Of a DNA stretch of 64,000 nucleotides, positions 7,837-62,689 are shown one piece after another (position 1 is the first letter of the stretch; the number at the start of each line of letters is the position of its first letter). The position numbers and the translations under genes were made by a program. The notes below the pieces were generated by a model. It did no database searches, had not been told where the DNA came from, and was given only the letters and a program-made list of their open reading frames with translations. The DNA lies in the IMG/VR virus record IMGVR_UViG_3300046660_000219, positions 1 through 64,000 of that record, one strand, 5' to 3'.

Positions 7837-7979
7837 GCGGCTCGTCCTTGTAAAAGGTAGTCATCAAGGGGCTGTTGCGCTAATTTGCTGATAACCGGGT
7901 CATCACGCGCGCCTGCCTACTCACAAGTAAATTAGCCCACGTGTCGAGTATGGGTATTAGAGTAAGCAGCGTCATAAGA

Positions 7980-10200: not shown

Positions 10201-10205
10201 CTTCC

Positions 10206-10236
10206 AGGGTGTCGGCAATGCCGACACCCTTTCTTT
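10206..10236 (+). terminator. Intrinsic terminator
   Basis: AGGGTGTCGGCA-A-TGCCGACACCCT-TTCTTT. Confidence 0.85.
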
Positions 10237-10239
10237 GTG

Positions 10240-11320
10240 TCAAAATTCAGCAATGTTGCGTGTTTCGGAAGTATTTCTTGAAATATTGCCGGAAATTTCT
10301 CCGAAAACAGGCTAAACCGGAGGCCATAGAAGCATTGTAATTGTCTAGTGATCCAATGAGCTAGCCTAGTCTCCTCCTCTCCTTGGAATACACACTCCCT
10401 CCACTAATCTAGGGAGCTAGAGAGACAGCCTAATTCTTAATCACAGCCAAACAGGGTAACAGAGGCTAGACACACTAGACGCAGTCCTCTACGTCATTTT
10501 TCGGGCTCCCTACAAAAACGCCTATTTTCTACACTTTTCTTCAATTCTCCCCTCTACCCTCCCTACAGCTCAGCTTCAATACTCAAGCTTCCCATCTTTC
10601 GTACCTACCATTACGTGCTAAACGCTTTACAAACCTGAAGATTTTTCACACCTCGATTTTAGCTCCTAAAACGTACCCTAAAATCCGAACACCCTCTAAT
10701 CGCTTCTTTACGGTGCGCAGCACCTAATGCGCCAAGTCTACGCAAAGATTGGCCGTTTCTACACGTCTAAAATAAAAGGTATTTACCACTTTTACCAAGC
10801 GCCAGGTTTAGCAGACCTTTAGCTAAAATTTCCTAAAGCTCGCTAAACTTGAACGTTGCTTCTTTCTGGGGTCTAGACACGTCTAGACCCCTCCCACACG
10901 AGTAGTTCAAAATCACGTCTCTCGCTAACTTGGCACTTGGTAAAATTTGCTAAAGCACCTCCACGCTCCAAGTGCACTTACCATTGTAGCAATATTTCCG
11001 ACGATCCTGTGGATCACCCATGTCATGGCTAGATCGGGTGAGCCAGTGTCCTGTGTGACGTGACTACTCTTCAGAGCGTACGTACTGTGGACATCCTGCC
11101 TTGTCCATGGGTGTTGCCGTGGGACCTGTGGTGGTAATTTATTTTCAGGTTTGAGGGGCGTGGAGTGCGTAAAATGGTAAAGAAAACAGGACGTATTGTC
11201 CTCTGGGTGACAGGTGGTTTGGCTGTGTACGCGGTCCTGCTGTGGCTCGTCGGCATGGCGGGCTACTACTGGTTTGGACGTTGACAGTACTTGTGTGTTT
11301 GAAGTCGGGGACGAGTAGAG
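10240..11320. other. Large non-coding region, candidate replication origin or packaging site
   Basis: No credible ORF; top strand C-rich then G-rich; dyad-symmetric element 10849-10910. Confidence 0.45.
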
Positions 11321-27474: not shown

Positions 27475-28107
27475 ATGCAAGTGACTAACCCTATTCGCGG
27501 CAGCGCGAGCATGCAGACTTTTGCTGCTGAGCAAAAGCTTATCCAGGCTATCCGTGAATCCGAACATCCGGAACTCTTTGTAATCAACAATTCGGACCTG
27601 CCGGATCATCATAACCGGCCTACGGATCAGCAAGGCACTATCCTTATGCGGTGTTCGCAAAAAGGTATCAATGGCGATCACCGTATTCGTATACCGTCGT
27701 CGTTTGTGCCAATCCAACTTACCACACAGAGCCCGTGCACTAAGGACGATCTTCTAGCGTCGGCCGATCTGGCGCGCCTGCGCCAGACTAAGCGTATCAA
27801 GCTGATTAGCTATGAAGACGCTATGGACATCATCGATAAGGATGGTGAGTCCCGAGCTGAATACGATCGCGTCATGGCTATTGCTATGCGCATCGGTGAT
27901 TATACCGGTGCTGATACACAAGGTAACATTGGTGAGCCTACGGAGATTTCGCAAATCAACGGCCACCTGGAAACGGTTGTCGATGGCTATAAGAGCGGGG
28001 CTATGAGCCTGCCTCGCCTACGTGCCGAGGTGCGTCGCATGGAGCGTACGCTTAACCTTGAAGATATGGCTTACCTTAACCGGGAAGTTCCCGATTGGAA
28101 CAACTAA
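27475..28107 (+). CDS. Hypothetical protein, putative virion component
   Basis: AGGAG RBS; IPSSFVPIQLT pattern recalled from jumbo myovirus structural ORFs. Confidence 0.6.
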   Translation: MQVTNPIRGSASMQTFAAEQKLIQAIRESEHPELFVINNSDLPDHHNRPTDQQGTILMRCSQKGINGDHRIRIPSSFVPIQLTTQSPCTKDDLLASADLARLRQTKRIKLISYEDAMDIIDKDGESRAEYDRVMAIAMRIGDYTGADTQGNIGEPTEISQINGHLETVVDGYKSGAMSLPRLRAEVRRMERTLNLEDMAYLNREVPDWNN

Positions 28108-28116
28108 TTTAGTAGC

Positions 28117-28338
28117 GTGAGATACCTTAACGAGACCGTCCCTCTCGGTTTAAGGTAGTCGCTATCTTCGGATAGCGATTGGTTGATCGGTGGCTCAACC
28201 TCTCACCTTTTAGAGCGGCCAGTAAAGGCCGCTCGGACGACGCGTGAGTATGCAGCAGTAGGTCCACTTGCTTTCCCCTCAGCAGGTTCGGTATAACTGG
28301 TCTGGCGCTCGTGTAGCGCTTATACTCACGCGTCGTCT
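28117..28338 (+). ncRNA. Candidate structured non-coding RNA (four-way junction, hairpin, long-stem multibranch domain)
   Basis: Up to nine nested stems including a cUUCGg hairpin and a perfect 16-bp helix; no credible ORF; CTAATTTA upstream, terminator downstream. Confidence 0.75.
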
Positions 28339-28378
28339 TACAGTTAGTGTTCTAGTCTCCTGTGAAGTCCCTCACCTC

Positions 28379-28413
28379 AAAGCCCGTCAGGCCTCGTGCT
28401 TGGCGGGTTTTTT
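28379..28413 (+). terminator. Intrinsic terminator, near-identical copy at 62707
   Basis: AAGCCCGTCAGGC-CTCGT-GCTTGGCGGGTTTTTT. Confidence 0.85.
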
Positions 28414-28507
28414 CGTGTCCGTACACTTAGCATTTAGCTAATTTACTGTAGAACGGAACGCTACCCGCCGACGTTCCCACTGTTTTGTTATTCAAGGTTT
28501 CGAGCCT

Positions 28508-29530
28508 ATGAAGGACTCTCGTTCGTTTGAGGCTGTGACGCGTGAATTGCGTAGGCAAGAAGCCGTTGGCGAAAAGGTAATCGCTAGCATCAAGGCTTTC
28601 CGTCCAGCAGGCAAGGCCAAGATCACCTTGGCTAACGCTAGTATCATGCTCGGTAATGCCGAATCCGTGATGCGTGAAGTCTCCACGCTGCGCGACGAGC
28701 TACGCCTCAATGCGTTTGCGGTTGAGGCGCGCTATGTCCAGCGTAACGCGATTGATCTGGATACCCTTTACGACAATCTGTTGGCCGCCGCTAACGATCT
28801 AGTCGAAAAGGCCAGCCCGATAGCGCCACTGGGTGCGTGCACTGACGTTATCGATACCGTTACTGCGGCATTGGTAAACGGTGGTCAAAACTGGGCTGCG
28901 CGTACGTCGGCTTTTTCTGAAAGTCCGACGACATCGTTCATCATCGCTACCTATACACGTCAGCCTTATACGGATGGCGATAACAAGTTGGTGGTGATTG
29001 TGTCGGTCGAGTATCCAGACACCGGTTATGCCCCGACGTCGGCCCGCTACGCGCTCAGCGTCCTTTACGGACCACTTGAGGCCTATGTCTGGGAAGCCAA
29101 CGTTGTGCACCGTAGCTTCAGCGTCAACCTGGGTGCTGCTAGCAGCACTATTGGTACACGTGCCGCTGACATCATCGCTAGCCGCCTGGAACGTGATGAC
29201 GTGACTCTACGATTTAATCGTAGGTTCAAGCAACCACGTCGCGCTAACGAGATTCGTGCCGATGACATCTGCGGTATGAGCATTCTACCGTTAGCTATCA
29301 CCGATATGGACGAGGAGCGTTGTCTTCTTACTGTCGGTGTTGATCTGCCTGGATTGATCAGCCCTACGTCGCTAGTTGCACTAGGTAGCGAGATCAAGCG
29401 GCGCACGATTAACCAGCTTGGTATCCGCGATATCAACGTCACGGATGAAGCTACACTTGTTATCGGCTTTGTCCCAGAGACGGATATGTCGTTGGCGGCC
29501 GAGCGGATCAAGAAGCTAGCGCAACGATAG
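28508..29530 (+). CDS. Hypothetical protein, late cluster
   Basis: 340-aa ORF after CTAATTTA at 28438. Confidence 0.75.
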   Translation: MKDSRSFEAVTRELRRQEAVGEKVIASIKAFRPAGKAKITLANASIMLGNAESVMREVSTLRDELRLNAFAVEARYVQRNAIDLDTLYDNLLAAANDLVEKASPIAPLGACTDVIDTVTAALVNGGQNWAARTSAFSESPTTSFIIATYTRQPYTDGDNKLVVIVSVEYPDTGYAPTSARYALSVLYGPLEAYVWEANVVHRSFSVNLGAASSTIGTRAADIIASRLERDDVTLRFNRRFKQPRRANEIRADDICGMSILPLAITDMDEERCLLTVGVDLPGLISPTSLVALGSEIKRRTINQLGIRDINVTDEATLVIGFVPETDMSLAAERIKKLAQR

Positions 29531-29539
29531 GAGACGGCA

Positions 29540-30652
29540 ATGCTACTGTATCCGTCATCCAATACCGTTGTGTCGCAGTTTTTCGATCCCAGTGTGCTTA
29601 GCATCACGGTAGAAGCGCGAGATTTCAACGGTCTTAGCTTGCCAATCACACCGCCAACTAAAGCGGTTGATGGTACGTGGAGCGCTACGCTTACTATTCC
29701 TGCCGCCGCGCCATTGTGCACTGTTGCGACCGACTACTACACGCTGACGTGGATCAACGGCACTAGCCGCACTATCCTACAGTTTCAAGTAGTAGGTTAC
29801 AGTGAAGGTCAAGAAGAGCCACCGCCAGCCGCGCTAGGGATAATCAACCAAAACCTCTACGACCAAGTCATCCTACCGTCCAACACAGATACTATTTCTG
29901 TCTCACTGTTGGATTTGGCTGGCAACGTAGTGTTAACGGCTGATCCCAGTGATATCACGTTGGTCGGCGAGAATCCCGGAGGTAAACAGTATCACGTAAA
30001 GTTTGCACTGGGTAACAACGCACTGCCTGCTGGTGTGACGCTGTACATCGGTGAGTACATCATGCTTTGGGAGTTCGGTCAGGGTGCGTTACAGGCGCAA
30101 GAGTACCGGCAAACCTTCATGATCACGTCAATGACGGCAGCATTGGTAACTGGGCTGCGTAACTCTCTGAAGCAGGTTATGTCCGCTTGGTTGCCGCGTC
30201 ACCAGATGCACGACGTTGAGCTTATCGATTGTTTGTACCGGGCAGCAGATCGTATCAATACGGAGCCACCGCAAGCCTGGAACTTCACGCCCGATAGACT
30301 ACAAAAACTTGTACCGATGGCTTTGCGGGAGGCTGGTGTTTACGAGGTGTTGTCGCGACTCTATTTAGCTGAAGGTATGGCGGCGTTTGATTATCAAGGT
30401 GGTTCTATTTCCGCCAACATCGACCGCACACAATATCTTCAATCGCGTATGCAAGAGGCCACGTCGTGGTTGGATAGCCATCTGAAGCAAAACAAGCTCA
30501 TGGCCGCCCGCAAATCTGGTCTGTCGCCGATCGGTGCGCTGCGCATCACGGTTAGTCCGACCGGAAACAATAACAACTTCGCTGCTATTCGCCCAAGCAC
30601 GGCGGAAATGTTCGCGTTGAGCGGTGCTCGCTCTTACTTTTTTGCTTCCTAA
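29540..30652 (+). CDS. Putative neck/head-tail adaptor protein
   Basis: Ig-like N-terminal half; LYLAEGMAAFDYQGGSISANIDRT pattern. Confidence 0.5.
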   Translation: MLLYPSSNTVVSQFFDPSVLSITVEARDFNGLSLPITPPTKAVDGTWSATLTIPAAAPLCTVATDYYTLTWINGTSRTILQFQVVGYSEGQEEPPPAALGIINQNLYDQVILPSNTDTISVSLLDLAGNVVLTADPSDITLVGENPGGKQYHVKFALGNNALPAGVTLYIGEYIMLWEFGQGALQAQEYRQTFMITSMTAALVTGLRNSLKQVMSAWLPRHQMHDVELIDCLYRAADRINTEPPQAWNFTPDRLQKLVPMALREAGVYEVLSRLYLAEGMAAFDYQGGSISANIDRTQYLQSRMQEATSWLDSHLKQNKLMAARKSGLSPIGALRITVSPTGNNNNFAAIRPSTAEMFALSGARSYFFAS

Positions 30653-49429: not shown

Positions 49430-49458
49430 CCTAACCTTCGGCTAATTTACTATTGAGC

Positions 49459-49493
49459 AAGCGCGCTGGGTTCACCGCTCAGCGCGCTTTTTT
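49459..49493 (+). terminator. Intrinsic terminator
   Basis: AAGCGCGCTGGG..CTCAGCGCGCTTTTTT. Confidence 0.8.
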
Positions 49494-49581
49494 GTTGTCT
49501 AAATCACAGGCAAAATAGTATAGTGCTTGCTAGTCACGGCCAGACTGAGCCTATACTTAAGCCATCACTATGGGACGAATA

Positions 49582-57410: not shown

Positions 57411-58571
57411 ATGACCACAGCAGTTCTCGCCGCGACGGATCTATCTAAGGCAGGCGGCGCGCTAAGGCAGTTTCGCGCGGCGTTCTCCAAAACCGGTACG
57501 CTGGGAAATACCGATACTACCGGTATTTCGGATGGTGTGGCCACTTCAGAAACCAGTCGTGATGTCTTCATGTCGCCGCCGTATCAAGTTAGCGACATTC
57601 AACTGTGCTTCAGCAATATCTACATCAACTCATCCGGCGAAGCTGTCACTACTAACGACATAACGGTACAAGCGAACGTCGAGATCGCAGGTGTGTCTTA
57701 TCCGCTGTTCCAGGCCGGTCGCCGTAACATGGTGCTGGAGCCGGGTGCGGTTGACGTACCGTTTGATCCACTAGCCATCGACATTCCCGCTAACACTGCG
57801 ATGTACTATCGGGTCTACGTTAGTGTTTCGTCTGGTGGCGTGTGGCCGCGTGGGCGTTTCGGCCGCCATAATCGCGCAGGCGGTATTACTGCTGGCGCGA
57901 ACTCTACGGCGGCTATTGGTACGCTACCTAACGATCAAGGCCAGTACATTTACGGTCCCAGCCTAGTGCTAGGTCGTACCGTTGGTAACTCGGCTCCTAG
58001 TGTTCTTGTTGTTGGTGATAGCCTCGTGGCTGGGCAAGGTGACACTGGCGACGCTAACGGCGCAGTCGGCTTCGCGGAACGCGCACTGACTGGTGTAGTA
58101 GGTTACACTACCCTTACCAAGTCCGGCTATCTGATGACGTCGCTCACCAACTCGCACACGCGGTCGCTGGCGCGCTGCACGCAGTTCTGCTCATCGGCCA
58201 TCTTGGAGCTTGGCTCTAACGATATTTTCGGCTCGCACGTCAACCTTGCCACCATGCAAAGCCGTGCGGCGGCTGGTGCCGCGCTCCTGAAGAATCGTGG
58301 TCTCAAGGTCTTTATGACTACTATTATGCCACGTTCGAGTGGCGGTGTGTCGGCTAACCCTACCGATAGCGCAACCACGGCGGCGTACAATGATTGGCTG
58401 CGCCTAGGTCAGTCATTCATGGACGGTCTGTTCGACATTGCTGACATCTGTGAGACGACGCGGAATTCGGGTCTGTGGAAGCCGGCGCTGCAACCGGGTG
58501 ATGGCATTCACCCCAACGGTGCTGGTTACGCTACTATTTCTGCGGGCATAATCACCAGTCAATTGGTCTAG
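57411..58571 (+). CDS. Tagged SGNH hydrolase
   Basis: MTTAVLAATDLSKAGG; GDSL, GSND, DGIH. Confidence 0.85.
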   Translation: MTTAVLAATDLSKAGGALRQFRAAFSKTGTLGNTDTTGISDGVATSETSRDVFMSPPYQVSDIQLCFSNIYINSSGEAVTTNDITVQANVEIAGVSYPLFQAGRRNMVLEPGAVDVPFDPLAIDIPANTAMYYRVYVSVSSGGVWPRGRFGRHNRAGGITAGANSTAAIGTLPNDQGQYIYGPSLVLGRTVGNSAPSVLVVGDSLVAGQGDTGDANGAVGFAERALTGVVGYTTLTKSGYLMTSLTNSHTRSLARCTQFCSSAILELGSNDIFGSHVNLATMQSRAAAGAALLKNRGLKVFMTTIMPRSSGGVSANPTDSATTAAYNDWLRLGQSFMDGLFDIADICETTRNSGLWKPALQPGDGIHPNGAGYATISAGIITSQLV

Positions 58572-59635: not shown

Positions 59636-60880
59636 ATGGTAACTGCGGTCCTTGCTTCTACGGACATTGCTACGGCTGGTGGTTCACTAAAAGAGTATGT
59701 ACCACGTCGCTTGATTCACGTTGGGACGCGCTCTGGTAACAACGGTGTTGGACAATCAAACGGTACGAACCTTCAATTCAATACCGTTACCAACCATTAT
59801 GTGCCGATCGCCGCTCGCGGTTTGCGTTTGATGTACGTTAACTTTCAAGTAGCGCAGGGCGCTGCCGAGGCTGATCAAACGGCTGACATTACCTTGAAAG
59901 TTGGCGCACGTCCCGCTGGTGCGTCGCCCGGTAAAACCCAACCTGACGCGCCGTCAATTGGTACCTGCCGCCGTGTTACTTGGGGCGGTGCTGTGTCCAC
60001 GACACTGTTAGGATCAGTGTCCGCTGTCGTCGGTAGCACCAACGCAATATCGGATCCACTACCTTTTTATCTGCCCGGCAACACTCTGCTATCAGTGCAG
60101 ACGTACGCTACCTTGACGTCTGGTCAGTACTGGCGAGGGCGTGGCGTAATTAGTGGCCCCGGCGAACGTAACGAAGAAGGCGTTACCGTTACCGATCGCT
60201 CGATTTCTGGTGGTGCGGCTGGTACGGCTGCGTGGTCCATCGGGCCTAACCTTATTTTAGGTATCCCTGATAACCCTAATGCTAGATCTGTGGCCATTAT
60301 CGGTGACAGTATCGCTACCGATACCGGAGACACGGCCGATACTTCGACTGGTATTGTTGGTTACGTTGAGCGCGGGCTAGGTATTTCTGTACCTAACGCC
60401 AAATTCACGCGTGGTGGTACTAAACTCGCGCACTGGACCACGCGTAGCTATTCGCAAATGGATCTAATCGCGGCGTACTTCACCGATGCTATTATCGAAC
60501 TTGGCATTAACGACGTTGGCACGCCGTCTAGTCTTTCGACCATGCAGGCAGATGTTGGTGCGATCATCAACAAACTCCGAGCCCAAGGTCTGCGTATCTA
60601 TCTTGCTACGCTGACGCCGTGGACTACGTCCACTGACAGTTGGGTTACGACTACCAATCAAACGGTAACAGCTAACGAAGCTCTACGTGTTGCGTACAAC
60701 ACGTGGGTCCGCACTATGCCTTTGGGGATTGCTGGCGTGATCGAGGCGGCGGACATCGCTGAAACCGCCCGCAATTCTGGCATCTGGAAAGCAAATAGTA
60801 CGGCAGACGGTGTTCACCCTAACGCCGCTATGCACTTGCTGTTGTCCGCGTCTGTTACTCCTGCCATGTTTGGCTACTAA
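59636..60880 (+). CDS. Tagged SGNH hydrolase
   Basis: MVTAVLASTDIATAGG; GDSI, GIND, DGVH. Confidence 0.85.
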   Translation: MVTAVLASTDIATAGGSLKEYVPRRLIHVGTRSGNNGVGQSNGTNLQFNTVTNHYVPIAARGLRLMYVNFQVAQGAAEADQTADITLKVGARPAGASPGKTQPDAPSIGTCRRVTWGGAVSTTLLGSVSAVVGSTNAISDPLPFYLPGNTLLSVQTYATLTSGQYWRGRGVISGPGERNEEGVTVTDRSISGGAAGTAAWSIGPNLILGIPDNPNARSVAIIGDSIATDTGDTADTSTGIVGYVERGLGISVPNAKFTRGGTKLAHWTTRSYSQMDLIAAYFTDAIIELGINDVGTPSSLSTMQADVGAIINKLRAQGLRIYLATLTPWTTSTDSWVTTTNQTVTANEALRVAYNTWVRTMPLGIAGVIEAADIAETARNSGIWKANSTADGVHPNAAMHLLLSASVTPAMFGY

Positions 60881-61124: not shown

Positions 61125-61511
61125 ATGGTAGCCTTAGAGAACCCGTTCCGCACAATCCGTCTTAGCGCCAAGCTAATGCGCCGTGAGGGTTACCACTACG
61201 TGCCAACCTATGCACATTGGTGTCCTGGCTGTGAAGAGCTGCATGATTATGCCGTAGATCAACCATTTCGTAACGGCGCGCGTTGGTCGTTTTCTGGACC
61301 TCCGGATAGACCTAGCTTTTCACCTTCCATGAACATCTCGATCGGTGAGCCTGTCGAAGAGCGCTGTCATTATTACCTGACTGTTGGTGTCTTACAATTC
61401 TGTCCCGATAGCACGCATGCTTTAGCCGGACAATCTGTGCCACTTCCCGATATCCCACAACATATTTGGCTACGCGCCGGTATTAACCTTTCTTCGGAGA
61501 CGTCAACATGA
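61125..61511 (+). CDS. DUF6527-like Cys/His protein
   Basis: WCPGCEELH, WSFSG..PSFSPSM, RCHY..G.LQFC.DSTH. Confidence 0.75.
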   Translation: MVALENPFRTIRLSAKLMRREGYHYVPTYAHWCPGCEELHDYAVDQPFRNGARWSFSGPPDRPSFSPSMNISIGEPVEERCHYYLTVGVLQFCPDSTHALAGQSVPLPDIPQHIWLRAGINLSSETST

Positions 61512-62689
61512 CGACCGCTGTACTTAATGCTAATGATCTTGCTACGGCAGGCGGTCCGCGTCGCGTCATGCAAGTTGGTACTCGCTGCCAGATTCTGGGT
61601 ACGCCGGTGGCCTCAAAGAATAGTACCAACACGCTTACCCGTCACATCATTCCCATCGCCGCGCGCAACATTCAACTGGGTTATTGTAACTGGGCCGTCA
61701 CCTCAGTTAATAACACGCAAGGTGGCGAAACTGACGGCCCGGCGCAATACTCTCGAATGTCAGCAGGCTTCCTACCGGACTTTGCTGTAGCTAATGTTAT
61801 AGCCGCGCAATTCAGCGGTAAGACTACTCCGACGTTGGATGTTGGTGGTACTTTTATTTCTGATCCTATCGGTGTGTACATACCGGCCGGAACCGCTATT
61901 GGTGTTCGCAGCTCTATGGCTACGGCCACGGACGTTAACTGGTTCGGTGGTCTGACTACCGTTAGTGGTCTTACGGAGCGCACGGAATACGGTACGGTAG
62001 CCAGCCCGGTGACTGACAAGTCGCTCAGTGGTTCCATCGCTAATGGCCTTGGTGCTAGCTTCACGCCTACTCTTATTCTGGGTGTTCCTGTAAACCCATT
62101 GGCGCGCTCTGTTGCGATCATTGGCGACAGTATTCCCACGGGTACGGGCGACACGGCTGACGCCAGTACTGGCGCTATCGGTTATATCGAACGCGGCCTG
62201 ACCATGGCTGTACCTGCGTCTAAGTTTACTCGCGGTTCCGATCGCTTGAGTTATTGGGCGGTGCGTCGCTATTGCCGCATGTCTTTGATCACGAAGTATT
62301 TTACGGACGTGATCATCGAACTCGGTGTTAACGACTACCAATTGACGTTGTCTACCGCTTCGCAAATGCAGACCAACTTTATGGCTCTGCGTGATGAATT
62401 GCTTAGCGCCGGTATACGTGTTTGGGCGTGTACCGTTACGCCCGTTACCACGGGTACGGCTGGAGCCCAAACGCCAAGCACTTATGTGGCTGTACAGCAA
62501 GCCTATAACACTTGGTTACGCGCTGGTGTGGCTGGTGTAAGCGGGCTTATCGATGCTGCGCTTATAGCTGAAGGCGGTCTCAATACGGGTGTATGGGTGC
62601 AAGCTTATTTCGGTGATGGTACTCACCCTAATCAAGCTGGTTCTATTGCTATGTCGGCTGCACTTAACCCGGCTATGTTTGGATACTAA
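61508..62689 (+). CDS. Tagged SGNH hydrolase
   Basis: MTTAVLNANDLATAGG; GDSI, GVND, DGTH. Confidence 0.85.
   Translation: MTTAVLNANDLATAGGPRRVMQVGTRCQILGTPVASKNSTNTLTRHIIPIAARNIQLGYCNWAVTSVNNTQGGETDGPAQYSRMSAGFLPDFAVANVIAAQFSGKTTPTLDVGGTFISDPIGVYIPAGTAIGVRSSMATATDVNWFGGLTTVSGLTERTEYGTVASPVTDKSLSGSIANGLGASFTPTLILGVPVNPLARSVAIIGDSIPTGTGDTADASTGAIGYIERGLTMAVPASKFTRGSDRLSYWAVRRYCRMSLITKYFTDVIIELGVNDYQLTLSTASQMQTNFMALRDELLSAGIRVWACTVTPVTTGTAGAQTPSTYVAVQQAYNTWLRAGVAGVSGLIDAALIAEGGLNTGVWVQAYFGDGTHPNQAGSIAMSAALNPAMFGY

What the first reader, a model, noticed from the sequence alone, without database searches (positions are those of the whole stretch)
28104..28413. Self-contained, highly structured ncRNA candidate inside the virion gene cluster
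Seen: CTAATTTA (28104), then ~270 nt with no credible ORF, a terminator (28379-28413), and a second CTAATTTA (28438) for the next gene. Domain 1 is a near-perfect four-way junction: GTGAGA 28117-22 pairs with TCTCAC 28201-06, enclosing TACCTTAA-CGAGA/TCTCG-TTAAGGTA, GTCGCTATC-TTCG-GATAGCGAT (cUUCGg loop) and GGTTGA/TCAACC. Next is hairpin GAGCGGCC/GGCCGCTC (28213-34). Domain 2 is a perfect 16-bp helix (28236-51/28322-37) enclosing about three weaker hairpins. G-U pairs and UUCG favour + strand RNA over a DNA palindrome. Inference: a late phage RNA, e.g. packaging/assembly RNA (pRNA analogue), protein sponge or anti-defence decoy. I do not recognise it as a known family.
Basis: partly seen in the sequence, partly recalled or inferred. 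Interest (0 to 1): 0.88.

Follow-up and report, generated by a model that had tools for sequence, protein, structure and literature searches.

The report
New structured RNA gene in jumbo phage
A roughly 300-base stretch between two genes of an uncultured PaBG-like jumbo phage encodes a stable, elaborately folded non-coding RNA with its own promoter-like motif and terminator. Its fold is kept by many compensatory mutations in the only known relative, it matches no catalogued RNA family, and its job is still unknown.

Summary
A second CTAATTTA follows at 28438.

- **Fold strength:** z = -7.6. This is the most structured of 22 intergenic gaps in the window.
- **Conservation:** one relative exists (L003; flanking proteins 50-67% identical). 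It has the same architecture at the same spot, although blastn aligns only about 20-nt stretches at the two ends.
- **Covariation:** a model-guided alignment gives 98.5% paired cells and 23 base pairs changed on both sides, against 0-4 in register-shifted controls.
- **Strand:** the many G-U pairs make the fold specific to the + strand (L003: -129 versus -96.5 kcal/mol).
- **Known families:** nothing in Rfam 15 matches.
- **Promoter motif:** CTAATTT(A) recurs upstream of genes throughout this phage group, PaBG included.
- **Related locus:** four more distant relatives carry a different structured RNA of about 230 nt in the same position. CM searches detect no homology between the two types.
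- **Shared feature:** both types display C-rich apical loops.

Verdict: this is a real + strand ncRNA gene of a new, very small family. The function is inferred only. The most likely mode is a trans-acting RNA that works through its conserved exposed loops, as C-rich-loop sRNAs do. The pRNA and anti-defence ideas have no support yet.

The parts
28104..28111 (+). CTAATTTA promoter-like motif for the RNA; overlaps the TAA stop (28105-07) of the upstream 210-aa gene
   Evidence: All 6 exact copies in the window are intergenic and face a downstream gene. The same motif lies upstream of genes in L003, L019-L022, L032 and PaBG. Helix P1 starts 5 nt after the motif here and 4-5 nt after it in the B-type RNAs.
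28112..28116 (+). Short 5' leader GUAGC; probable start region of the transcript
   Evidence: TAATTTAGTAG is identical in L003. No transcription start site was measured.
28117..28206 (+). Domain 1, a four-way junction. P1 (28117-22 with 28201-06) encloses P2 (28123-57, loop CCGUCCC 28136-42), P3 (28158-79, UUCG) and P4 (28181-200, loop UCGGUGGC 28187-94).
   Evidence: MFE and centroid structures. In L003, pairs changed on both sides number P1 2, P2 5, P3 4 and P4 6 of 7. The loops CGUCCC and UCGGUGG are invariant.
28213..28234 (+). Hairpin P5 (GAGCGGCC / GGCCGCUC), preceded by the conserved joiner UUUA
   Evidence: L003 keeps GAGC/GCUC at the base with a different inner stem.
28236..28337 (+). 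Domain 2, a 17-bp helix P6 (28236-52 with 28321-37). It encloses hairpin P6a (28253-304, apical loop UUCCCCUC 28273-80) and hairpin P6b (28305-19).
   Evidence: P6 has 6 pairs changed on both sides and 3 G-U replacements in L003. L003 has the same three-way layout, with loop UUGCCCGUCCCUU.
28338..28378 (+). 3' linker, mostly unpaired, carrying a third C-rich motif GUCCCUC (28367-73) followed by ACCUC
   Evidence: L003 lacks it and has a 7-nt linker instead. It contributes to a weak sub-threshold RybB-like match (21.6 bits against a threshold of 40).
28379..28413 (+). Intrinsic terminator (GC-rich stem plus U6)
   Evidence: Equivalent terminators lie at the same place in L003 and L019.
28438..28445 (+). 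Second CTAATTTA motif, the separate promoter-like site for the downstream 340-aa gene (ATG at 28508)
   Evidence: CTAATTTA-NT-R-TAGAAC is conserved in L003 and L019.

Best explanation
Window 28112 to about 28410 (+ strand) is a gene for a stable non-coding RNA of about 300 nt, and it founds a new family.

**Transcription (inferred).** It starts from a phage-group-specific promoter motif (CTAATTTA), probably read with the phage-encoded sigma-like factor known from PaBG. It ends at its own intrinsic terminator. The next gene has a separate copy of the same motif, so the RNA is an independent transcription unit. It may also form the 3' end of read-through transcripts of the upstream gene.

**Fold (shown by covariation).** A four-way junction (P1-P4), a hairpin (P5) and a three-way junction on a 17-bp helix (P6). 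This rigid scaffold holds a few invariant single-stranded loops.

**Mechanism (inferred).** It most likely acts in trans through those loops. Two or three are C-rich (GUCCCUC, UCCCCUC) and can pair with G-rich, Shine-Dalgarno-like sequences, as the C-rich-loop sRNAs sX13, 6C and RNAIII do. The alternative is that the loops hold a protein.

**Confidence by step.**
- Real, + strand, structurally constrained RNA: about 0.85.
- Independent transcript: about 0.6.
- Loop-mediated trans action: about 0.4.
- C-rich loops pairing with G-rich RNA specifically: about 0.25.
For: - **Fold strength:** z -7.64. It is the strongest of 22 intergenic gaps in the window.
- **Homologue:** a single-sequence covariance model finds L003:8606-8823 end to end at the syntenic position (17.3 bits; E 6e-6 locally, 6e-4 in 76 kb).
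- **Covariation:** 98.5% of cells are paired and 23 pairs changed on both sides, against 0-4 when partners are slid and 0 of 500 shuffles. Separate MFE folds of the two sequences give the same helices in the same order.
- **Strand:** L003 folds to -129.0 kcal/mol (z -6.9) on + and -96.5 (z -3.3) on -. At least 10 G-U pairs sit in the conserved helices.
- **Not coding:** there is no conserved ORF. Six-frame similarity is limited to the terminator and promoter and appears in all frames.
- **Promoter motif:** it recurs upstream of genes across the group, PaBG included. PaBG-group phages encode a sigma-70-like factor (PMC7412058).
- **Related locus:** more distant relatives carry another structured RNA at the same locus with motif, terminator and second motif. 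It shows 96.3% paired cells and 17 compensated pairs.
- **Loops:** C-rich apical loops recur in both RNA types while their stems change completely.
- **Precedent:** C-rich loops pair with G-rich sites near the ribosome-binding site in sX13 (PMC3771888) and 6C (PMC6486639, abstract seen).
Against: - Only two family members exist, so no R-scape-type statistic is possible. The pair counts come from an alignment fitted to the model.
- There are no expression data.
- No target has been identified. The loops pair with the downstream gene's 5' UTR no better than with shuffled sequence.
- GGGAC near 4 of 68 crude start sites is only a weak enrichment.
- The invariant non-C-rich loop UCGGUGG is unexplained.
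- The host is unknown.
- The fixed position just upstream of the same gene in both RNA types would also fit a cis role.
Confidence: 0.55

Rival explanations
1. It is a cis-acting leader for the downstream virion-gene block. Either the folded RNA modifies RNA polymerase, or recruits a factor to it, so that it reads through the terminator at 28379-28413 (as HK022 put, EAR or N/nut do). Or it is simply the attenuated leader transcript of an antiterminated operon, like the lambda PR' 6S transcript.
For: - In both RNA types the element sits directly upstream of the same 340-380-aa gene, although the upstream neighbour differs.
- A strong terminator separates it from that gene.
- B-type loci carry a conserved 35-52-aa arginine-rich ORF immediately upstream of the RNA. 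Its composition recalls the arginine-rich motifs of N-type antiterminators (the comparison is from general knowledge).
Against: - A second copy of the same promoter-like motif follows the terminator in every relative. The downstream gene therefore need not depend on read-through.
- The element is about 230 nt, far larger than put (about 70 nt) or boxB.
- A-type loci have no arginine-rich small ORF.
- PaBG lacks the element altogether.
Confidence: 0.15
2. It is a protein-binding scaffold or decoy. The RNA would sequester or organise a host or phage protein: a sponge for an RNA-binding regulator or nuclease, an anti-defence decoy, or an assembly/packaging RNA like phi29 pRNA.
For: - Rigid multi-helix scaffold with a few invariant loops (CGUCCC, UCGGUGG) while the stems drift.
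- Fast turnover of the RNA at a fixed locus (A-type versus B-type) fits an arms-race molecule.
- Location next to head and connector genes.
Against: - No partner is identifiable.
- The neighbouring proteins give no RNA-binding signal.
- No Rfam pRNA match.
- The two conserved loops pair with each other only weakly: 5 bp including 2-3 wobbles, read by eye.
- No repeat structure of the ToxI or CRISPR-mimic kind is visible.
- From general knowledge: jumbo myoviruses package DNA with a terminase and do not need an RNA, and PaBG does without this element.
Confidence: 0.15
3. It is a DNA-level element: a cruciform-prone palindrome cluster serving as an origin, pac site or recombination hotspot, and not a functional RNA.
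For: In the window sequence the - strand also folds well (z -7.0), because most helices there are Watson-Crick perfect.
Against: In L003 the conserved helices contain at least 10 G-U pairs. The - strand loses 32 kcal/mol and drops to z -3.3. Selection therefore acts on the + strand RNA. The promoter motif and the U-tract terminator are also oriented for + strand transcription.
Confidence: 0.03
4. It is a transcribed but functionless spacer or 3' UTR whose structure merely stabilises the upstream mRNA.
For: No terminator separates the upstream gene from the RNA in the A-type loci. Read-through transcripts would carry it as a 3' UTR.
Against: A stabilising 3' end needs only the terminator hairpin. 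Keeping six helices through 23 compensated pairs, together with invariant loops, is far more than that. In B-type loci the nearest upstream called gene, the K/A-rich protein gene, has its own terminator; that gene is not homologous to the A-type upstream gene.
Confidence: 0.07

Closest known systems
C-rich-loop regulatory sRNAs: Xanthomonas sX13, actinobacterial 6C, S. aureus RNAIII/RsaE type
   Same: Stable stems present C-rich apical loops (GUCCCUC, UCCCCUC). In those sRNAs such loops pair with G-rich, SD-proximal motifs. sX13 acts without Hfq and 6C without RNA chaperones (PMC3771888, PMC6486639).
   Different: - No sequence or CM homology. sX13 gives only 17.9 bits against a threshold of 50, and only on the B-type RNA of L022. 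6C gives nothing.
- This RNA is two to three times larger.
- It has multi-way junctions and a second invariant loop that is not C-rich.
- It is phage-encoded.
- No target is known.
phi29 pRNA (packaging RNA)
   Same: A phage-encoded structured RNA near morphogenesis genes. Loops could in principle mediate RNA-RNA contacts.
   Different: - No Rfam match.
- Different architecture.
- No convincing self-complementary loop pair.
- The phage is a jumbo myovirus-like genome with a conventional portal, not a phi29-like podovirus.
Cis-acting antitermination RNAs and leaders: HK022 put, EAR, lambda nut/boxB with N, and the lambda PR' 6S leader
   Same: The layout is promoter, then structured non-coding transcript, then strong terminator, then morphogenesis genes. 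B-type loci add a small arginine-rich ORF.
   Different: A second promoter-like motif lies after the terminator. The element is much larger. No matches to Rfam (which includes EAR, per my recollection) reached threshold.
Phage- or prophage-associated structured RNAs of unknown function: T4 stable RNAs C and D, GOLLD, ROOL, HEARO
   Same: Structured RNAs carried by phages whose existence was established by covariation before any function was known.
   Different: No CM match to any of them. This RNA is smaller than GOLLD and ROOL. It is not next to tRNAs (none in the window) and not next to IscB/TnpB-type genes.

Membership tests
Any Rfam 15 family (4227 covariance models) | Score at or above the family's gathering threshold | tested here: not met
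   There are 0 matches in the whole window at gathering thresholds. With permissive filters the best are RybB at 21.6/40, sX5 at 15.9/50 and sX11 at 22.1/70 on L003. All of them overlap the terminator.
phi29-type pRNA | CM match to the pRNA family | tested here: not met
   No pRNA hit even at E up to 10.
phi29-type pRNA | Two loops complementary between molecules, allowing ring formation | tested here: inconclusive
   The two invariant loops (CCGUC and GGUGG) could form only 5 pairs including 2-3 wobbles. This was read by eye. No covariation informs it.
phi29-type pRNA | Bound to the prohead connector and required for DNA packaging | not testable with these tools
   Needs prohead RNA analysis and in vitro packaging.
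sX13 / 6C-type C-rich-loop sRNA | Homology to the family model | tested here: not met
   sX13 scores 17.9 bits against a threshold of 50, on B-type L022 only. Neither sX13 nor 6C gives a hit on the window RNA.
sX13 / 6C-type C-rich-loop sRNA | C-rich motifs exposed in apical loops of stable stems | tested here: met
   Loops CCGUCCC (28136-42) and UUCCCCUC (28273-80), plus the unpaired GUCCCUC (28367-73). The loops are conserved in L003 and recur in the B-type RNAs while the stems change.
sX13 / 6C-type C-rich-loop sRNA | G-rich target motifs near translation starts, regulated by the loops | tested here: inconclusive
   GGGAC occurs upstream of 4 of 68 crude gene starts, against 1.1% background. 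There is no significant pairing with the adjacent 5' UTR. The host is unknown.
Processive antitermination RNA (put / EAR / nut) | The downstream operon depends on read-through of a terminator that follows the RNA | tested here: inconclusive
   The terminator is present. An independent promoter-like motif follows it in all relatives. Transcription was not measured.
Riboswitch or attenuator | An alternative pairing between the sensor domain and the terminator | tested here: not met
   No anti-terminator alternative appears in the MFE or centroid structures. In L003 the terminator stands alone after a 7-nt linker. No riboswitch family matches at threshold; the only riboswitch-class hit was SAM/SAH, 10.3/40 bits, E 9.2, on the - strand of L003.
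tRNA, tmRNA or tRNA-like element | Cloverleaf recognised by ARAGORN or Rfam | tested here: not met
   ARAGORN finds no gene in the window. The four-way junction has 13-bp and 9-bp arms and no T-loop sequence.

The most novel reading that the evidence does not exclude
PaBG-like jumbo phages keep a dedicated 'RNA slot' just upstream of their connector gene block. The slot is filled by fast-evolving, independently transcribed structured RNAs: the A-type here and a B-type in more distant relatives. These RNAs share only their layout and their C-rich apical loops. They would form a new class of phage riboregulator or decoy that captures G-rich ribosome-binding sites or a C-rich-loop-binding host factor during infection, with turnover driven by conflict with the host.
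Probability: 0.2. Interest if true: 0.75.

Novelty: categorically new. Interest (0 to 1): 0.62.

Why it matters
Very few structured RNAs of lytic phages have a known function, and none is described for the PaBG-like jumbo phages. This case offers a clean candidate: a compact architecture supported by covariation, defined ends, and conserved loops that point to obvious mutations to test. A second RNA type with no homology detectable by the models occupies the same locus in sister phages. If the RNA regulates translation or disarms a host factor, that would extend RNA-based host takeover or counter-defence to jumbo phages. If it is a cis element, it would reveal how this group switches on its virion genes. 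The caveat is that the family currently has two members, both uncultured, so nothing can be tested without synthesis or isolation of a relative.

Tried and rejected
- **Rfam:** gathering thresholds on the whole window; permissive mode on the window RNA, L003 and L022. Only sub-threshold hits appeared, driven by the terminators.
- **GenBank phages:** megablast and blastn found no match.
- **Protein searches for more A-type members:** the downstream 340-aa gene and the upstream 210-aa profile each have only the window copy and L003.
- **Other relatives found through the connector:** contigs L023-L025 do not reach the RNA. L019 keeps only the terminator and the second promoter motif.
- **Protein-alignment scans:** metagenome and genome contigs gave nothing. 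Viral contigs gave only the source contig plus L032, which is B-type.
- **DNA-pattern scans:** patterns built on the 5' end and the conserved loops returned chance hits only. These were rejected by folding or by the CM.
- **A-type versus B-type homology:** R1 on the B loci and R2 on the window and L003 match only terminators and long hairpins.
- **Loop pairing with the downstream 5' UTR:** no better than shuffled sequence, p 0.10 and 0.31.
- **Conserved small ORF in the gap:** none.
- **B-type arginine-rich ORF versus the C-terminus of the A-type upstream protein:** no profile similarity.
- **Neighbouring proteins:** the 340-aa model (pLDDT 79.6) has no PDB match and in BFVD matches only uncharacterised PaBG and phiRSL1 proteins. 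The 210-aa model is too poor to use, pLDDT 56.6.
- **MAFFT alignments of the two RNAs:** misaligned, so not used for pair counts.

Full report
**Source and context.** The window is bases 1-64000 of IMG/VR contig IMGVR_UViG_3300046660_000219, which is 205.9 kb long. GenBank phages show no nucleotide similarity.

Gene order links it to the jumbo Pseudomonas phage PaBG (Baikalvirus) and more loosely to Achromobacter phage Motura. The order is SbcD-like nuclease, primase, SprT-like protein, head-tail connector, 1967-aa helicase, portal. A weak tblastn match of the connector supports the link.

The finding lies in the 400-nt gap between a 210-aa gene (27475-28107; PHROG of unknown function) and a 340-aa gene (28508-29530; no family). 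The connector gene follows at 29540. 'Virion gene cluster' is therefore only approximately right, because the RNA sits at the edge between replication/repair genes and the connector block.

- Two CTAATTTA copies, at 28104 and 28438.
- A four-way junction: P1 28117-22 with 28201-06; P2 28123-57; P3 28158-79 with UUCG; P4 28181-200.
- Hairpin P5 at 28213-34.
- A 16-bp perfect helix (17 bp with a terminal G-U) at 28236-52 with 28321-37.
- A terminator at 28379-28413.

Inside the long helix the MFE has two branches rather than three. One is a composite hairpin with apical loop UUCCCCUC (28273-80). The other is a GC hairpin at 28305-19.

The + strand folds to -135.7 kcal/mol, z -7.64, and none of 100 dinucleotide shuffles does as well. 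Among 22 intergenic gaps of at least 120 nt in the window, this one is the most structured. Only TTG-start ORFs of 37 and 57 aa lie on the + strand.

**Relatives.** The downstream protein has a single homologue among 5.8 billion clustered proteins. It lies on a 12-kb Logan contig (L003, sample ERR9698291) with the same gene order.

The flanking proteins are 50% and 67% identical, and the flanking genes are 56% and 65% identical at the nucleotide level. The 348-nt gap in L003 is barely alignable by blastn, which finds only about 20-nt matches at the 5' end and the terminator. MAFFT misaligns it.

Folded on its own, however, L003 gives the same helices in the same order. These are P1 enclosing three hairpins, then P5, then a 15-bp helix enclosing a hairpin with a C-rich loop and a GC hairpin, then the terminator (-129 kcal/mol, z -6.9).

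**Covariation.** A covariance model was built from the window sequence alone (R1). With filters off it finds L003:8606-8823 end to end. The score is 17.3 bits, with E 6e-6 in the 800-nt neighbourhood and 6e-4 in 76 kb. It finds nothing else credible in the window.

On the resulting alignment (A10), 98.5% of comparable cells form standard pairs. Twenty-three pairs changed on both sides: P1 2, P2 5, P3 4, P4 6, P6 6. Sliding the 3' partners by 1-3 columns gives 0-4, and no shuffle out of 500 reaches the observed value.

Two caveats apply. There are only two sequences, and the alignment was fitted to the model. The independent folds do agree, and the invariant positions are the loops (CGUCCC, UUCG, UCGGUGG) and the joiner UUUAGAGC, not the stems.

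**Strand and coding.**

- In L003 at least ten of the conserved pairs are G-U.
- Its reverse complement folds 32 kcal/mol worse, at -96.5 kcal/mol and z -3.3.
- The constraint therefore acts on + strand RNA, not on DNA palindromes.
- Six-frame comparison of the two gaps finds similarity only over the terminator and second promoter, and in all six frames. That is DNA-level conservation. No ORF is shared.

**Ends of the transcript.** All six exact CTAATTTA copies in the window are intergenic and point at a downstream gene; 1.3 copies are expected by chance. CTAATTT(A) sits likewise upstream of genes in L003, L019-L022, L032 and in PaBG itself.

The PaBG group encodes its own sigma-70-like factor (PMC7412058). 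This makes a phage-specific promoter the natural reading, though that is an inference. No sigma-70 consensus promoter is present.

The first helix begins 5 nt after the motif. The terminator is followed 25 nt later by the second motif, and CTAATTTA-NT-R-TAGAAC is conserved in L003 and L019. The layout is thus promoter, RNA, terminator, promoter, gene.

The genes preceded by the motif have mixed functions, so 'late' is not established. In the A-type loci no terminator separates the upstream gene from the RNA. The RNA may therefore also end read-through transcripts of that gene.

**A second RNA type at the same locus.** Connector homologues at 40-43% identity led to four further contigs: L020, L021, L022 (NCBI GCA_034286235.1) and L032 (IMG/VR).

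Upstream of their 371-381-aa homologue of the downstream gene lies a 0.7-0.8-kb gap. It contains, in order:

- a terminator;
- an uncalled, SD-preceded, arginine-rich ORF of 35-52 aa;
- ACTAATTTA;
- a structured RNA of about 230 nt;
- a terminator;
- CTAATTTATTA before the gene.

This 'B-type' RNA has 96.3% paired cells and 17 pairs changed on both sides, 9 of them outside the terminator, against 1-4 in slid controls.

The two models do not cross-detect. R1 on the B loci and R2 on the window and L003 hit only terminators and long hairpins. The two types are therefore either unrelated or diverged beyond recognition. PaBG has no gap at this position.

What the two types share is layout and one feature. 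That feature is an apical loop carrying a C-run (GUCCCUC, UCCCCUC, CCGUCCCCGUCCC, ACCCCUC, GUCCCCG, ACCCCCG) on stems that differ completely between phages.

**Known families.** No Rfam 15 family reaches its threshold in the window. Permissive searches give only sub-threshold hits overlapping the terminators: RybB, sX5, sX11, sX13 and CC1840. ARAGORN finds nothing. Full-text literature searches turned up no description of an RNA in PaBG-like phages.

**Mechanism.**

*Shown:* a + strand RNA structure under purifying selection, with conserved single-stranded loops, flanked by a group-specific promoter-like motif and a terminator.

*Inferred:* an independent, stable transcript that acts through its loops.

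The best-supported guess is antisense recognition of G-rich, SD-like sequences by the C-rich loops, as in sX13 (PMC3771888) and 6C (PMC6486639). The evidence for this is thin:

- GGGAC lies upstream of 4 of 68 crude gene starts, against 1.1% background.
- The adjacent 5' UTR is not a better partner than shuffled sequence.
- The host is unknown.
- The invariant UCGGUGG loop is unexplained.

The rivals are:

- a cis-acting antitermination or leader element. The fixed position and the arginine-rich ORF in B loci favour it. The second promoter motif disfavours it.
No partner is identifiable, there is no pRNA match, and PaBG lacks the element.
- a DNA element. The strand asymmetry contradicts it.
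- a mere 3' UTR stabiliser. Too much structure is conserved for that.

The neighbouring proteins gave no clue.

**Verdict.** This is a real ncRNA gene that matches no catalogued family, so at the family level it is new. Its likely way of working, conserved loops on a scaffold, has precedents. Interest is moderately high because of the clean covariation, the defined ends and the recurrent 'RNA slot' in sister phages. It is limited by the family size (two members), the lack of expression data and the unknown function.

Noticed in passing
L020:8047-8290, L021:8049-8291, L022:4900-5147, L032:3144-3386: A second, different structured RNA of about 230 nt ('B-type') occupies the same syntenic position in more distant relatives. 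It is preceded by ACTAATTTA and followed by a terminator and a second promoter-like motif. It shows 96.3% paired cells and 17 compensated pairs. Invariant elements include the loop UUCAGCCUUG and GCCAUAGAGGGCG. It also has a variable hairpin with a C-run in its apical loop.
   Followed up: partly
L020:7841-7999, L021:7846-7998, L022:4694-4849, L032:3000-3107: An uncalled but conserved ORF of 35-52 aa with an SD (GGAGTGC...ATG) and an arginine-rich C-terminus (NR..RRA....R.RKRR) lies just upstream of the B-type RNA promoter motif. It could be an RNA-binding partner. It has no profile similarity to the A-type upstream protein.
   Followed up: partly
window 10201-10924: A 724-nt stretch without ORFs follows a terminator-like hairpin. 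Its + strand is strikingly pyrimidine- and C-rich (ctcctcctctcc, ctccctccac, ctcccctctaccctccctac), with z -5.7. Its - strand is G-rich, so it is complementary in kind to the C-rich loops of the RNA. It may be another non-coding transcript or a regulatory region.
   Followed up: no
window 49442-49500: A CTAATTTA motif is followed within about 15 nt by a strong terminator-like hairpin (AGCGCGCTG...CAGCGCGC TTTTTT), ahead of the gene at 49570. This could be a very short transcript or an attenuator.
   Followed up: no
window 7928-7935(-), 22706, 28104, 28438, 49442, 51227; L017 (PaBG) 1155 and 2335: CTAATTT(A) is a conserved promoter-like motif upstream of genes across the PaBG-like group. It is probably read by the phage's own sigma-like factor. 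In two cases (22706 and 28104) it overlaps the stop codon of the preceding gene.
   Followed up: partly
L020:8340-8400, L021:8436-8480, L022:5199-5250, L032:3440-3500; window 28455-28477: The 5' UTR of the downstream 340-380-aa gene carries conserved hairpins. In B-type phages these are GCYGCCACCGCAGG and CUAGGUGGCG...CGCCACCUAG. In the window it is GGAACG-loop-CGUUCC. This suggests post-transcriptional control of that gene.
   Followed up: no
window 57411-58571, 59636-60880, 61508-62689: Three paralogous genes for SGNH/lysophospholipase-L1-like esterases (phrog_8480) lie close together, interspersed with other ORFs. The 554-aa protein at 45234-46898 matches a PHROG annotated as tail fiber protein.
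   Followed up: no
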